Shown in pieces: positions 28,829-32,421 of a stretch of 64,000 nucleotides of DNA. Both the position numbers and the translations under genes were made by a program. How positions within the stretch are numbered: the first letter of the stretch is position 1; each line of letters starts with the position of its first letter. Where the stretch lies: positions 1-64,000 of the IMG/VR virus record IMGVR_UViG_3300042147_000020. The stretch is one strand, 5' to 3'. A model generated the notes under the pieces. It did not search any database. It saw only the letters and a program-made list of their open reading frames with translations, and had not been told where the DNA came from.

Positions 28829-30337
28829 TTACTTGTCCCTTCTGGCAATGATGCCCGTGGCACCGACGGTGAACATACGGCGTGTTTGATCACGCTTACC
28901 TTTGTTAATCATGTCCCAGAACCAATCCTTGGGAATCAACACCCCACCAATGATTGGAATCTTGCTGGTGTCTACTCGAGGGTAGAGGGTCTTGATCAAC
29001 TCGATGGCAAACTCGGGGTCTTTACGGATGCGATCAAGGGCTTCTCGAGTCAAGATGCTCAAGTCCGTCACCAAGCACAGACGTAAGTGTTGCACGTCCC
29101 GCAAGGTCAGTTCGTACGAACTGCGAACATTCAAAGCCGCATCCATCAACACCGTTTCGTCAGGCATCGGTTTGTCCCAACGGTAAAGCTGGAAGTTGAA
29201 CACCGACTGAGTGTACTTGCTGATAAAGGGTGCTTCTTTAATCAGGAACCGCAACGCCGCAGCAGAGAACGCAAAGTCACCGAGGTTATTCAGGTTGACT
29301 AGGTCGTGAGGGTCGTTTTCATCCACACCCAGCAACAGTTCTAGGACAGGACTGGTGCGAGGTACTAGCCAGTTAGGCATCCAATCGTCGAACGAAGGAA
29401 TGCGGTTACGGGCTAGCGGTTGCAACCGTTCTTTATACAGTCGAGTGTAGTAGTCGTACAGGAACCGTTCATTAGAAGGACGGCGGGCACGTTTAACCAA
29501 CTCGTAGACTGGAACGTTAGGACGGAACTTCTCATCGACCATCTGGTTGTGAATGACCACAGGGTAGTGAGCCATCACAGCAACCACCTTGTCGTACATA
29601 AAGGTGTAGTCGAATCCAGTTTCCCACGGTGCACCTTCAGCAGCCTTCTGACCCTTCTCAGGTTGGGCTACGAAGTTAAAGCCTCCTACGATGCTTGCCT
29701 GACGTTCTGCGATTGCCAACAGGGGTTGGGTTCCCGCTTGCGTCCGAAGCGTTGTAGCGCGTCCTGAGATGTGTTCCTGTACCCATTGCTCCAGTGTCTC
29801 GCCGTAACCTGCCACCGTCTCACGCATTGTGAAGATTTGGTGGAGGATCAGGGCGATTGAATCTGGAATTGGGTAGTGGTAGTCAATCTCGTGTAGCAGT
29901 TCAGCACGCCCTTGTGAGGAACGTACACGGAACTCGTCACGCCACTTCTCTGCTTGGGTTCTATCCTGAGCACGGTAACGGAACGAGATGGTTACTTCAC
30001 AAGAAACGTAGACGGGCTTAACGAACACATCAAGGCGTTGATCGTAGAAGACGAACTGAACGTTGTCTTTCTTTACTGCTGAGGTCAGCGTACGGTCTTC
30101 GATGTATTGTTCGTCAGCTTCGATATTGATGCGACCATTGAACGGGAACTTGTTCTGGATGCCAGTATCGGTCAGTGTGGTTTGAGGTTGGAATTGAGAC
30201 TCAGCCATGCCGAAGAACTCAAAGCCAGTATCAGGAGGGAGCCTCATGATCTCAATCAACTGCTTCGCTACCTGAGTAATGGCTGGTCGCGTAATCGAGC
30301 TATACGTTTCTGGAAGTTCAACAACGATGTTAGGCAT
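28829..30337 (-). CDS. Virion structural protein
   Basis: Start moved to MPNIVV at 30337 (GGAG RBS); first gene of the structural operon. Confidence 0.65.
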   Translation of the reverse strand: MPNIVVELPETYSSITRPAITQVAKQLIEIMRLPPDTGFEFFGMAESQFQPQTTLTDTGIQNKFPFNGRINIEADEQYIEDRTLTSAVKKDNVQFVFYDQRLDVFVKPVYVSCEVTISFRYRAQDRTQAEKWRDEFRVRSSQGRAELLHEIDYHYPIPDSIALILHQIFTMRETVAGYGETLEQWVQEHISGRATTLRTQAGTQPLLAIAERQASIVGGFNFVAQPEKGQKAAEGAPWETGFDYTFMYDKVVAVMAHYPVVIHNQMVDEKFRPNVPVYELVKRARRPSNERFLYDYYTRLYKERLQPLARNRIPSFDDWMPNWLVPRTSPVLELLLGVDENDPHDLVNLNNLGDFAFSAAALRFLIKEAPFISKYTQSVFNFQLYRWDKPMPDETVLMDAALNVRSSYELTLRDVQHLRLCLVTDLSILTREALDRIRKDPEFAIELIKTLYPRVDTSKIPIIGGVLIPKDWFWDMINKGKRDQTRRMFTVGATGIIARRDK

Positions 30338-30406
30338 GTCAAAGCTCCAGTAAATGATCATAAGATAAACGGCATAAAGCCCGAGGCGTAAACCTCGGAC
30401 TCTAGC

Positions 30407-30526
30407 CTATTTCTTTTCGTCGAGTGCTTTAAACAGTTTCTTGATCGCGTTGCTGGTATTCTTGGTCCGATAAGCCGAGAGAGTTCTGTTCAGAGCTTCG
30501 GCTGCTTCTTTAGGGGACAGGTTCAT
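30407..30526 (-). CDS. 39-aa basic microprotein coupled to the Tad1-like gene (not in the ORF track)
   Basis: MNLSPKEAAEALNRTLSAYRTKNTSNAIKKLFKALDEKK; ATGA overlap with the upstream stop; ends just before a hairpin. Confidence 0.55.
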   Translation of the reverse strand: MNLSPKEAAEALNRTLSAYRTKNTSNAIKKLFKALDEKK

Positions 30527-30957
30527 GACAGACTGATCCGTCCAGCTTCCAAGTCTTCCATCGCCTGCTTTATCATTGTGGCCTTACGCAGACGATCGGT
30601 ACGGCTGTGTAGTGTATTGATAGCTTTGGTGATGTGTTCCAGAGCTTCACCGTTCTCAGCACACGCGAATGGACCAGACTGACAACCCACCAAGCGGTGT
30701 TCACAGATGGCCAGTAACGATTCCAGTGTGACACCGTTGAAGCCTTCTGCTGGATTACCTTGCTGGAAGAAGATCTCTACCTCTTCCAAAGAATCCACAT
30801 ACATGCGATCGCTGTAGCTGGGGTTCGTACGTAGATCGAAGTTAGTGATCTCGTAATGGTGACAATCCCCTCCAGGACCTGGTTGGTCCTTTGCGGTAAT
30901 GACAAGTGCTTTAGGATCAAGATCAGAGGAGGACACTACGTGTCTGCTTAATTGCAT
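30523..30957 (-). CDS. tad1: Tad1-like anti-Thoeris / anti-CBASS nucleotide sponge
   Basis: GPGGxxHxY, IxFQxG, NGVxxExLLxIxxxRLxxxQxGPFxxxENxxALxHIxxA match the Tad1 signature. Confidence 0.8.
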   Translation of the reverse strand: MQLSRHVVSSSDLDPKALVITAKDQPGPGGDCHHYEITNFDLRTNPSYSDRMYVDSLEEVEIFFQQGNPAEGFNGVTLESLLAICEHRLVGCQSGPFACAENGEALEHITKAINTLHSRTDRLRKATMIKQAMEDLEAGRISLS

Positions 30958-31073
30958 ATAAAAACCCTTAGACGGAATGGGAGAGCTTTAAAGACATTAG
31001 ATACACCCAAGTAGTAAGAAAAAACCAAAAAAAAAAAACACTACTGAACAAGCTAGTGTTTTTCTTGTGTTAC

Positions 31074-31571
31074 TTATTCAGCAACGAAGCCGCGATTAAC
31101 GGCTGGGTTGTCGCCGAGGATTTCATCGAGCACAGCGCCGAACTGAACGGCTGCCAGTTGAGAAGGGTTCAGAGGGTTGATCTGGTTCAGGTTCATGTCA
31201 GCAGTCAATGCCGAACCGCTCAGGACCAACACCCGATCGTGACCATTCGGAATGATACCGAAGTTCATTGGAGGGACGCCGCCAAAAGCGTAGTAGCCAC
31301 CCATCGACGTGTGCGGTTGACGTTGGTATTGCGGTTGAGCTTGTGGTTGTTGGAACTGCTCTTGCTGAGCTTTAACCATGGCCAGAGTGACCGGGTCGAT
31401 CAGCAAGGTGTACCCTTTACCTGCGTCCAGCAATGCGCCGAACTCAGGGTCGATCTCATTGACCGCCGACACTACACGTTCGAACGGAACCTGAATGGAA
31501 CGCTTGTCGAAGATCTGACCGTGTACGAGGTTGGCCATAGGAACGATAGTTACTTTCTTTGCGTCAGTCAT
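31074..31571 (-). CDS. Hypothetical protein with Gln-rich linker
   Basis: Start moved to MTDAKK at 31571. Confidence 0.7.
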   Translation of the reverse strand: MTDAKKVTIVPMANLVHGQIFDKRSIQVPFERVVSAVNEIDPEFGALLDAGKGYTLLIDPVTLAMVKAQQEQFQQPQAQPQYQRQPHTSMGGYYAFGGVPPMNFGIIPNGHDRVLVLSGSALTADMNLNQINPLNPSQLAAVQFGAVLDEILGDNPAVNRGFVAE

Positions 31572-31606
31572 TGCATACTCTCTTGAGTGTGGGTTGTTAC
31601 GAAGGG

Positions 31607-31915
31607 TTAGTTTTTGTAGCCAGGCGGAACACCCAGCTTGTGTTGACGAATCCAACGGTTCACGAAAGCCCGTTGAACCCAACCAAACACGTAGTTAACA
31701 GCAAACAGCGGAACCAGTGCCATAGCACCGAAGTAACCTGCGACTAACATAAACAGCGCAGTACCTATTGTAAACTTGTAGCGATTCGGACAGGTGGTTA
31801 AGAGCAGCTTCAGGGGACGTTGGTCGCCTTTACGCTCGAAGAGGTAGATGCCTCTGGAGACTGTGATGAAGCCCACGATGAACCAGAGGTAGATGAAACC
31901 TTCGAATAAAGACAT
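31607..31915 (-). CDS. Small membrane protein
   Basis: Start MSLFEG at 31915 (AAGGAG RBS); 2-3 TM segments. Confidence 0.7.
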   Translation of the reverse strand: MSLFEGFIYLWFIVGFITVSRGIYLFERKGDQRPLKLLLTTCPNRYKFTIGTALFMLVAGYFGAMALVPLFAVNYVFGWVQRAFVNRWIRQHKLGVPPGYKN

Positions 31916-31925
31916 GGTGTGCTCC

Positions 31926-32195
31926 TTAGCACTTGCCGTTATAGATAGCGTCCAGTTGTGGGTAGAACTTTTCAGCAACGTTGAACTCAACGCGGTTCAT
32001 CGCAGCAGGACCCATCTTTTGCAGACGTTTGGTCAGGGCTTCCAGACCACGTACCAGCTCAGCATTCAGTTCACGGGTAGCGAAGTACTCGTTGAATGGA
32101 ACGCCTTCAATGTGGATCACGTCATTCACGATGTCGTGTGCTACAGCAACTACAGTGTTCAGGGATTCAGTGCGGATCGAAGTATTGAAGTTCAT
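31926..32195 (-). CDS. Hypothetical early protein
   Basis: 89 aa, AAGGA RBS. Confidence 0.7.
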   Translation of the reverse strand: MNFNTSIRTESLNTVVAVAHDIVNDVIHIEGVPFNEYFATRELNAELVRGLEALTKRLQKMGPAAMNRVEFNVAEKFYPQLDAIYNGKC

Positions 32196-32238
32196 GGTGC
32201 GTTTCCTTCTAAGGATTTAAGATTAGGGTATTGCGGTC

Positions 32239-32400
32239 TTACTTCAACAGCGCCATTGCGTCGGCCAGTTTCTGGTCAGCGCTACGGTTGTCTTTCTCTT
32301 GAGCCTTTAATAGGTCTTCGGATTGCTTCAGAGTTTCACGACCTTTCGCCAAGTGTTGAGCGAGGTTAGGGTTGTGTACACCGTATTGAACATTGTTCAT
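32239..32400 (-). CDS. 53-aa helical early protein (not in the ORF track)
   Basis: MNNVQYGVHNPNLAQHLAKGRETLKQSEDLLKAQEKDNRSADQKLADAMALLK; GGAG RBS; first ORF after a TATATTAC promoter. Confidence 0.7.
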   Translation of the reverse strand: MNNVQYGVHNPNLAQHLAKGRETLKQSEDLLKAQEKDNRSADQKLADAMALLK

Positions 32401-32421
32401 TGCGATCACTCCAGAGTTAAG

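What the first reader, a model, noticed from the sequence alone, without database searches (positions are those of the whole stretch)
30407..30957. Tad1-like sponge with altered C-terminus and a coupled 39-aa microprotein
Seen: strong Tad1 signature (GPGGDCHHY, FQQG, NGVTLESLL, RL..CQSGPFACAEN..ALEH). The C-terminus reads SRTDRLRKATMIKQAMEDLEAGRISLS instead of the usual R..R.V.G ending. An unannotated basic 39-aa ORF overlaps its stop (ATGA). Established: Tad1 sequesters gcADPR and cyclic oligonucleotides, with C-terminal residues contributing to a pocket. Inference: possibly shifted ligand specificity, and the microprotein may be a partner or a second anti-defence factor.
Basis: partly seen in the sequence, partly recalled or inferred. 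Interest (0 to 1): 0.65.

Follow-up and report, generated by a model that had tools for sequence, protein, structure and literature searches.

The report
Lid-less Tad1 sponge with optional microprotein
A giant soil phage carries a real but unusual version of a known anti-immunity "sponge" protein (Tad1), followed by a genuine 39-residue mini-gene that related phages carry separately, fused to the sponge, or not at all.

Summary
Window 30523-30957(-) encodes a 144-aa protein. It matches solved Tad1 structures by sequence (phiKZ gp184 E 3e-12; CbTad1 E 1e-6; family profile 4e-25). Its AlphaFold model (pLDDT 94) finds only Tad1 chains by fold (TM 0.76). It sits in a terminator-bracketed two-gene cassette inside the head-gene block of a 239-kb phiKZ-like jumbo phage from rhizosphere metagenomes.

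The core nucleotide pocket is kept (H33, G67, R88, F97, N102, R119, R122). The adenine-stacking Phe is Cys92. The canonical RGVEG lid is replaced by a continuation of helix alpha2 ending in a conserved G-[RK]-x-S-L-S. This defines a lid-less subfamily of 23 among 157 nearest representatives.

The 39-aa ORF (30407-30526, ATGA overlap) is truly coding: dN/dS is 0.05-0.2, and all 5 substitutions in an independent contig fall on third codon positions. Relatives carry it split, fused in frame to Tad1 (178-179 aa, two samples), or lack it.

Most likely this is a signal-sequestering sponge with an optional accessory C-terminal module. Ligand, oligomer state, peptide binding and translation are all untested, and co-folding gave no answer. 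I rate it a new variant of a known kind, of moderate interest.

The parts
31027..31066 (-). Hairpin followed by a run of 12 U. It is terminator-like, ends the upstream variable gene set and forms the 5' boundary of the cassette.
   Evidence: Sequence. Fold: -11.3 kcal/mol, z -1.7, modest. Contigs of runs X3 and X4 regain similarity to the window at 31059.
30958..31026 (-). Leader of the Tad1-like gene, with a Shine-Dalgarno-like AAGGG at 30965-30969. It presumably holds the cassette's promoter, which was not identified.
   Evidence: Sequence. The region is nearly identical in relative L002. The sigma-70 consensus scan was uninformative.
30523..30957 (-). Tad1-family sponge gene (P0001, 144 aa plus TGA stop).
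   Evidence: Sequence matches: 8y6v_I gp184 E 3e-12; CbTad1 7uav/8kb* E 1e-6; profile versus CbTad1 E 4e-25. Model: (pLDDT 94). Fold: (top 20 hits all Tad1).
30526..30582 (-). Codons 126-144. This clade-specific tail replaces the canonical RGVEG lid. It is predicted to continue helix alpha2 to residue 137 and ends in GRISLS.
   Evidence: Alignment; helix 100-137. Only P0010 and the window's own cluster match residues 126-144. G[RK]xSLS also ends the distant P0055. A recombination breakpoint lies near 30570 in X3 and X4.
30523..30526 (-). ATGA stop/start overlap, where the TGA of the Tad1-like gene overlaps the ATG of the small ORF. No conserved Shine-Dalgarno sequence lies upstream, so termination-reinitiation coupling is inferred.
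   Evidence: The overlap is kept in all split loci (window, L005-7, L013, L014). There is no local RNA structure (z +0.65).
30407..30526 (-). 39-aa basic microprotein gene (P0002). The homologous tail of the fused relative is predicted to form two helices.
   Evidence: 10 invariant positions. (dN/dS 0.11 versus L014). (5 of 5 substitutions in X3 at third codon positions). (P0166 differs only by D36E). (helices 143-157 and 163-177 in fused P0009).
30371..30407 (-). Strong GC-rich hairpin starting at the last base of the small ORF's TAG stop, followed by a U-rich stretch. It is a terminator or RNA-stabilising element and the 3' boundary of the cassette.
   Evidence: -26.2 kcal/mol, z -5.9, 0 of 200 shuffles fold as well. 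A hairpin is present at this position in all relatives.
28829..30337 (-). Conserved 502-aa gene of the virion block (phrog_3289). It is downstream context and not part of the cassette.
   Evidence: It is 83-91% identical in relatives, against 50-79% for the Tad1-like gene.

Best explanation
P0001 is a Tad1-family nucleotide-signal sponge. The phage makes it to soak up a host immune second messenger, either a TIR-derived ADPR-type signal or a CD-NTase cyclic dinucleotide, before that signal can activate its effector.

It belongs to a lid-less subfamily. The conserved pocket core is retained. The adenine-stacking Phe is Cys92. The C-terminal lid loop is replaced by a roughly 20-residue extension of helix alpha2 ending in G-[RK]-x-S-L-S.

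The gene is the fastest-diverging member of an otherwise conserved head-gene block. It forms a self-contained, hairpin-bracketed cassette.

The 39-aa ORF is a real two-helix basic peptide, made in step with the sponge through the ATGA overlap. It is an optional accessory C-terminal module: relatives carry it split, covalently fused, or not at all. It most likely sits on or near the protruding alpha2 extension and tunes pocket closure, oligomerisation or localisation.

Shown: family membership, predicted fold, residue pattern, coding status and the fusion/fission/loss pattern.

Inferred: ligand binding, translation, coupling mechanism and physical association.

Sub-claim odds: Tad1 family 0.95; works as a sponge 0.7; peptide physically associates with it about 0.45. 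The overall confidence of 0.55 is for the composite statement.
For: Family and fold:
- Sequence matches.
- AF2 model with pLDDT 94, a beta-sheet plus helices 78-94 and 100-137.
- In Foldseek the top 20 hits are all CbTad1/CmTad1, best E 4e-7, TM by target 0.76; the next hit has E 0.66.

Pocket:
- H33, G67, R88, N102 and R119 are invariant in the clade, and those positions are H/G/R/N/R in 116-156 of 160 nearest relatives.
- They map to CbTad1 H29, G55, R78, N92 and R109, which contact gcADPR.

Lid loss and Cys92:
- All 16 representatives with Cys at this position lack the lid.
- All fall in one 23-tip lid-less clade.

Arms-race signature:
- The Tad1-like gene is 50-79% identical between relatives whose flanking structural genes are 81-99% identical.
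- X3 and X4 contigs swap only 30571-31058.

Precedent: phiKZ gp184 is a known jumbo-phage Tad1.

Peptide:
- Conserved in window, X2, X3, L005-7, L013 and L014.
- dN/dS 0.05-0.2.
- Fused in frame in L004 and in L077/L078, which are two different sequences; one lies on a 220-kb contig.
- The split and fused forms differ by 11 nt.
- The charges are complementary.
Against: - No binding or phenotype data exist for any lid-less member.
- Cys92 removes one face of the adenine stack. The lid residues G120 and N122 have no counterpart, so the known ligand might bind weakly or not at all.
- The cyclic-trinucleotide residues R90 and T97 are A100 and E107.
- The peptide is absent from five close relatives with otherwise similar sponges: L002, L008 (a deletion remnant), L009/10/23, L015 and L022.
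- Nearly identical peptides (90-97%) pair with sponge cores that are only about 54% identical and with two different tail types. There is therefore no co-variation.
- No RNA or ribosome data exist.
Confidence: 0.55

Rival explanations
1. The microprotein is an independent factor, such as a second anti-defence protein or a small nucleic-acid-binding or regulatory peptide. It shares the cassette and the coupled translation with the sponge, and the fused forms are tolerated accidents of an 11-nt deletion.
For: - It is present or absent independently of the sponge allele.
- The same peptide type pairs with divergent cores and with both tail types.
- It is basic, pI 10.
- Single members give weak HTH-like hits: Sigma70_r4_2 E 0.11 and HTH_23 E 0.12.
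Against: - The fused allele persists in two differing sequences. Its tail is still conserved against the split peptides: dN/dS is about 0.2 where synonymous sites are not saturated (the pairs with window, L014 and L006) and about half the residues are identical.
- The peptide is never found away from a Tad1-like gene.
- The ATGA coupling is conserved.
- The HTH hits are far below significance.
Confidence: 0.25
2. The protein is a virion-delivered Tad1, as in phiKZ, where gp184 is wedged in the capsid, cleaved and injected. Here the alpha2 extension and/or the peptide replaces the missing N-terminal capsid anchor as the packaging or docking device.
For: - The gene lies between gp91-like and internal-head-protein genes on one side and head-tail joining genes on the other, all on the same strand.
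- phiKZ gp184 is a packaged Tad1.
- The peptide keeps an [AS]-x-E motif at residues 8-10 in all types. From my own knowledge, this fits the S/A/G-x-E consensus reported for the phiKZ head protease.
Against: - There is no N-terminal extension: P0001 residue 1 aligns with gp184 residue 101.
- The cassette is bracketed by hairpins like an inserted accessory gene.
- The three-residue motif is expected often by chance.
- The peptide is optional.
Confidence: 0.15
3. The small ORF is a decaying remnant of a former C-terminal domain, a gene fission on the way to loss with no present function.
For: It has been lost repeatedly, and L008 keeps only a deletion scar.
Against: - Purifying selection within and between peptide types.
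- All five X3 substitutions fall at third codon positions.
- The ATGA overlap and full length are kept in at least six distinct contigs.
Confidence: 0.1
4. A programmed frameshift joins the two ORFs in the window into one fused protein.
For: Fused relatives exist, and the small ORF lies in the -1 frame.
Against: There is no slippery heptamer before the stop, no stimulatory structure (z +0.65), and the ATG is conserved at the overlap.
Confidence: 0.03

Closest known systems
Tad1 (Thoeris anti-defence 1): SBSphiJ7 Tad1, CbTad1 (PDB 7UAV/7UAW/8KBE-H), CmTad1 (8KBB-D)
   Same: - Homologous by sequence and predicted fold: an N-terminal beta-sheet plus two long helices.
- The pocket residues equivalent to H29, G55, R78, F87, N92, R109 and R113 are conserved.
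- It is small, acidic and phage-encoded.
   Different: - The lid (116-122, RGVEG-type) is absent and replaced by a helical extension ending in GRISLS.
- F82 is Cys.
- The cyclic-trinucleotide residues R90 and T97 are Ala and Glu.
- A coupled or fused 39-aa peptide is present.
- No ligand or oligomer data exist.
phiKZ gp184 (Tad1 of a jumbo phage; minor capsid protein, PDB 8Y6V chain I)
   Same: It is the best PDB sequence match (E 3e-12; profile 2e-29). It is a Tad1 domain in a phiKZ-like jumbo phage.
   Different: - gp184 has a roughly 100-aa N-terminal capsid-anchoring extension and a canonical QGTEGT lid.
- P0001 has neither.
- P0001 has the C-terminal extension and the peptide instead.
Acb2 (anti-CBASS sponge), which shares Pfam PF24729 Acb2/Tad1 hairpin with Tad1
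   Same: Same general strategy, and a precomputed weak PF24729 hit.
   Different: No Acb2 structure was found by sequence or fold. The local PF24729 scan does not reach P0001 at all.

Membership tests
Tad1 family | Significant sequence similarity to experimentally characterised Tad1 proteins | tested here: met
   phmmer: CbTad1 E 1e-6, CmTad1 E 3e-4, phiKZ gp184 E 3e-12. Family profile: CbTad1 E 4e-25, CmTad1 E 1.5e-20.
Tad1 family | Fold: N-terminal antiparallel beta-sheet plus two long C-terminal helices | tested here: met
   AF2 model with pLDDT 94. Foldseek top 20 hits are all Tad1 chains, probability 1.0, TM up to 0.76 by target; the next hit has E 0.66. This is a prediction and not a solved structure.
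Tad1 family | gcADPR/cyclic-dinucleotide pocket residues (CbTad1 H29, G55, R57, R78, F82, F87, N92, R109, R113) | tested here: inconclusive
   Seven are kept (H33, G67, R88, F97, N102, R119, R122). F82 is C92 and R57 is P69. The R57 position is P, I or V in nearly all nearest relatives.
Tad1 family | C-terminal lid that orders over the ligand (CbTad1 116-122, G120/N122; family motif RGVEG) | tested here: not met
   No such motif is present, and helix alpha2 runs on to residue 137. The motif is present in 108 of 160 nearest representatives and absent from the whole 23-tip clade holding P0001.
Tad1 family | Cyclic-trinucleotide site and hexamer contacts (CbTad1 R90, T97) | tested here: not met
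   The positions are A100 and E107. Arg occurs at this position in only 11 of 160 nearest relatives.
Tad1 family | Homo-oligomer (interlocked dimer, hexamer) | not tested
Tad1 family | Sequesters immune nucleotide signals and rescues phage from Thoeris or CBASS | not testable with these tools
   Needs binding assays and plaque assays.
phiKZ gp184-type packaged Tad1 | N-terminal capsid-wedging extension cleaved by the head protease | tested here: not met
   P0001 residues 1-3 align with gp184 residue 101 onward, and no upstream in-frame extension exists.
phiKZ gp184-type packaged Tad1 | Presence in the virion | not testable with these tools
   Only the gene context, within a head-gene block, is known.
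Translationally coupled split gene (fission/fusion pair) | Small ORF under purifying selection, a conserved 4-nt stop/start overlap, and an in-frame fused orthologue | tested here: met
   dN/dS 0.05-0.24. ATGA is kept in all six split loci. Fused forms are P0009 and P0165.
Translationally coupled split gene (fission/fusion pair) | Evidence that the small ORF is translated | not testable with these tools
   No run holding this stretch is on record as RNA; the only RNA-labelled runs are guessed and hold under a tenth of its sampled words.

The most novel reading that the evidence does not exclude
This would be a two-part sponge. In this Tad1 subfamily the built-in lid has been lost, and a separately encoded (or fused) two-helix peptide acts as a detachable lid or cap. 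Its invariant Tyr19 and its T-x-N-A loop would supply contacts that Phe82 and the G-T-N lid provide in classical Tad1. Phages could then switch ligand range or affinity by gaining, losing or fusing a 120-nt module.
Probability: 0.12. Interest if true: 0.7.

Novelty: new variant of a known kind. Interest (0 to 1): 0.45.

Why it matters
Tad1 sponges helped reveal new immune signals such as gcADPR. According to the reports read here, the Tad1 homologues tested so far inhibit type I Thoeris and CBASS; whether any tested homologue lacks the lid could not be checked.

A lid-less, Cys-for-Phe subfamily makes up about 15% of the nearest representatives and sits in a recombination hotspot of rhizosphere jumbo phages. 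It is a sensible place to look for a different ligand or binding mode.

The split, fused and absent forms of the microprotein offer a natural experiment on how tiny accessory genes modulate anti-defence proteins. They are also a clear example of a real sub-40-codon gene.

If the protein turns out to bind the usual ligands and the peptide does nothing measurable, this is simply another Tad1 homologue.

Tried and rejected
- Co-folding 2x P0001 with 2x P0002: verdict 'no answer', score 0.00, controls not run. This counts neither for nor against binding.
- Local Pfam scans: no family for P0001, even at E 10. Only a precomputed weak PF24729 hit exists.
- Pfam and PHROGs on the peptide gave only insignificant hits: MmeI_hel 0.18, DASH_Duo1 0.04, Sigma70_r4_2 0.11, HTH_23 0.12. 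The HTH idea is kept only as a weak lead.
- ESM Atlas on the peptide: nothing usable.
- Profile search for the peptide: only its own two clusters in 5.8 billion proteins. The first attempt failed on the 40-aa minimum.
- No copy of the peptide was found elsewhere in the phage genome (the one extra hit has E 0.013 and lies inside a 764-aa frame), in other Tad1 C-terminal extensions, or in 55 IMG/VR Tad1 loci.
- MAFFT placed the peptides on alpha1-alpha2 of Tad1. I judged this an alignment artefact and rebuilt the alignment without them.
- Programmed frameshifting: no slippery site and no structure.
- The sigma-70 promoter and terminator scan was uninformative. phiKZ-like phages use their own polymerases.
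- Supplementary tables of Hadary et al. are not held, so I could not check whether a lid-less member was among their 20 tested Tad1s.
- A Zn site formed by C85, H87, C92 and C99 was considered. It was not testable without coordinates.

Full report
**Observation.**
The minus strand of the window holds a 144-aa ORF at 30523..30957 and a 39-aa ORF at 30407..30526. They share the four bases ATGA. The peptide is basic (pI 10.0) and the larger protein is acidic (pI 5.1).

**Genome context.**
The window is the first 64 kb of a 238,799-bp IMG/VR virus record, CheckV 86% complete. It has no near relative among deposited phages. Neighbouring genes match:
- the phiKZ vertex protein gp91;
- phiKZ internal head proteins;
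- head-tail joining proteins.

The closest isolates by the head-tail protein are Xanthomonas, Ralstonia and Burkholderia jumbo phages, at 37-39% identity. The same DNA occurs in rhizosphere and soil metagenomes from other studies.

**Tad1 membership.**
- P0001 alone matches solved structures of phiKZ gp184 (E 3e-12), CbTad1 (E 1e-6) and CmTad1 (E 3e-4).
- A profile of 91 homologues matches them at E 2e-29, 4e-25 and 1.5e-20.
- 1,950 cluster representatives match at E<=1e-3.
- The AlphaFold2 model is confident (pLDDT 94). It shows a beta-sheet followed by helices 78-94 and 100-137.
- In Foldseek against the PDB the top 20 hits are all Tad1 chains (best E 4e-7, TM 0.76 by target). The next hit has E 0.66.
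- The local Pfam scan finds nothing. Only a precomputed weak PF24729 hit exists.

phiKZ gp184 is already described as a Tad1. It is a minor capsid protein whose N-terminus is wedged in the capsid and whose C-terminal Tad1 part is released by the head protease and injected.

**Pocket and lid.**
I mapped residues through the HMMER alignments onto those Leavitt et al. list as contacting gcADPR in CbTad1.
- Kept: H33, G67, R88, F97, N102, R119 and R122. The first, second, third, fifth and sixth are invariant across the 14 close homologues. They are near-universal in 160 nearest representatives.
- Differences: the adenine-stacking F82 is Cys92, and R57 is Pro69. The R57 position is P, I or V in almost all near relatives.
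- The cyclic-trinucleotide residues R90 and T97 are A100 and E107. Arg occurs there in only 11 of 160 relatives.
- The lid that orders over the ligand (116-122; G120, N122) has no counterpart. The family consensus ends R..RGVEG, whereas P0001 continues helix alpha2 to residue 137.

Of 160 representatives, 108 carry the lid motif. All 16 with Cys at the F82 position lack it. They fall in a single 23-tip clade that is entirely lid-less (FastTree support 0.69; three partial or aberrant rows were left out). This is therefore one subfamily-level change and not many independent events.

The ending G-[RK]-x-S-L-S is kept with different codons in relatives that lack the small ORF. It is also kept in a distant homologue from another phage type, P0055 with GKISLS. 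It is therefore selected at the protein level.

**The microprotein.**
Syntenic loci from other assemblies show three states.
- Split, with the ATGA overlap: the window, L014, L005/L006/L007 and L013.
- Fused in frame: L004 (P0009, 178 aa), and L077/L078 (P0165, 179 aa) on a 220.5-kb contig. P0165 differs from P0009 at several residues, including two in the tail.
- Absent: L002, L009/L010/L023, L015 and L022. L008 keeps only a deletion scar.

Split and fused forms differ by 11 nt directly after CTGTC/CTATC. The direction of the change cannot be decided.

The peptide comes in three sequence types, 50-90% identical, with ten invariant positions. Nei-Gojobori estimates give dN/dS 0.11 for window versus L014 (10 synonymous and 5 non-synonymous differences). 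Within type b the values are 0.05-0.19.

Contigs laid on the window give independent support:
- Run X2 holds an 844-nt contig across both genes with 3 differences.
- X3's contig carries five substitutions inside the small ORF, all at third codon positions by my count from the table. Its product, P0166, differs only by D36E.

The fused protein's model places two helices (143-157 and 163-177, pLDDT 67-92) after the alpha2 extension. The peptide has no detectable relatives anywhere else.

**Cassette and evolution.**
A hairpin with a U12 run precedes the Tad1-like gene. A strong hairpin (-26.2 kcal/mol, z -5.9) starts at the last base of the small ORF's stop codon.

Between relatives the Tad1-like gene is 50-79% identical while flanking structural genes are 81-99% identical. 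X3 and X4 contigs match the window up to 30570 and again from 31059, and are unlike it in between. The sponge core behaves as a swapped, fast-evolving cassette.

Nearly identical peptides accompany cores that are only about 54% identical and both tail types. There is thus no co-variation between peptide and sponge.

**Interpretation.**
I consider it near certain that this is a Tad1-family protein. It likely still sequesters a nucleotide signal, given the invariant pocket core and the arms-race pattern (about 0.7). Which signal it binds is open. Lid loss plus Phe-to-Cys makes a changed binding mode plausible but unproven.

The small ORF is a real gene by evolutionary criteria. Its translation is inferred. 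Conserved stop/start coupling, complementary charge and the natural fusions favour physical association (about 0.45). Frequent loss and lack of co-variation weigh against an obligate role. The co-fold job returned 'no answer' and is not used as evidence.

**Rivals.**
The alternatives are an independent small factor, a packaging or docking role by analogy with gp184, a decaying remnant, and frameshifting. They are weighed in the fields above.

**Novelty.**
Tad1 in jumbo phages is known. I found no description of the lid-less helical-extension subfamily or its optional split/fused microprotein in the papers searched. I could not check whether such a member was among the 20 Tad1s tested by Hadary et al..

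Noticed in passing
L002:5083-5889 and L014:40-639 (relatives); absent from window 31074-32409: In two relatives a Thg1-like gene (PF04446, the 3'-5' nucleotidyltransferase family) lies directly upstream of the Tad1-like gene. The window instead has four orphan ORFs there (202, 127, 89 and 56 aa) with no Pfam or PHROG match. The stretch between the internal-head-protein gene and the 502-aa gene looks like a variable accessory island.
   Followed up: partly
protein P0026: A 5,336-aa protein matches residues about 52-86 of P0001 in 12 separate stretches (E 1e-20). It is a giant protein that seems to carry repeated Tad1/Acb2 hairpin-like segments.
   Followed up: no
one search hit list (e.g. P0021, P0060, P0098, P0107, P0144): Many Tad1 domains sit at the C-terminal end of proteins of 200-480 aa (gp184-like or longer). 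Others sit at the N-terminal end of proteins up to about 500 aa. The C-terminal extensions are unrelated to the 39-aa peptide.
   Followed up: partly
L011:5998-6438 (Xanthomonas phage LucasX, LUCX_115): The roughly syntenic Tad1-like gene of the nearest isolate (36% identical) has lost several pocket residues. The R88, F97 and N102 equivalents read H, N and a Q-G-K stretch. It may no longer bind the same ligand, or any ligand.
   Followed up: partly
window 30537 and 30342-30468 in run X4: One low-depth X4 contig (depth 4.4) lacks one base at 30537, inside the tail-coding part. X4 contigs leave most of 30342-30468 uncovered. This could be an error, a frameshifted variant or a strain without the peptide.
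   Followed up: no
window 30661-30862 (P0001 residues C32, H33, H34, C85, H87, C92, C99): The lid-less clade is rich in Cys and His around the pocket. C92 and C99 flank the alpha1-alpha2 loop. A disulfide or a metal site is conceivable, and CmTad1 crystals hold a Zn ion. This was not testable without coordinates.
   Followed up: no
window 30772-30849 (P0001 residues about 37-62, beta2-beta3 loop): This loop borders the ligand pocket in CbTad1. It is the most variable part of the protein among close relatives, whereas the helices are well conserved.
   Followed up: no
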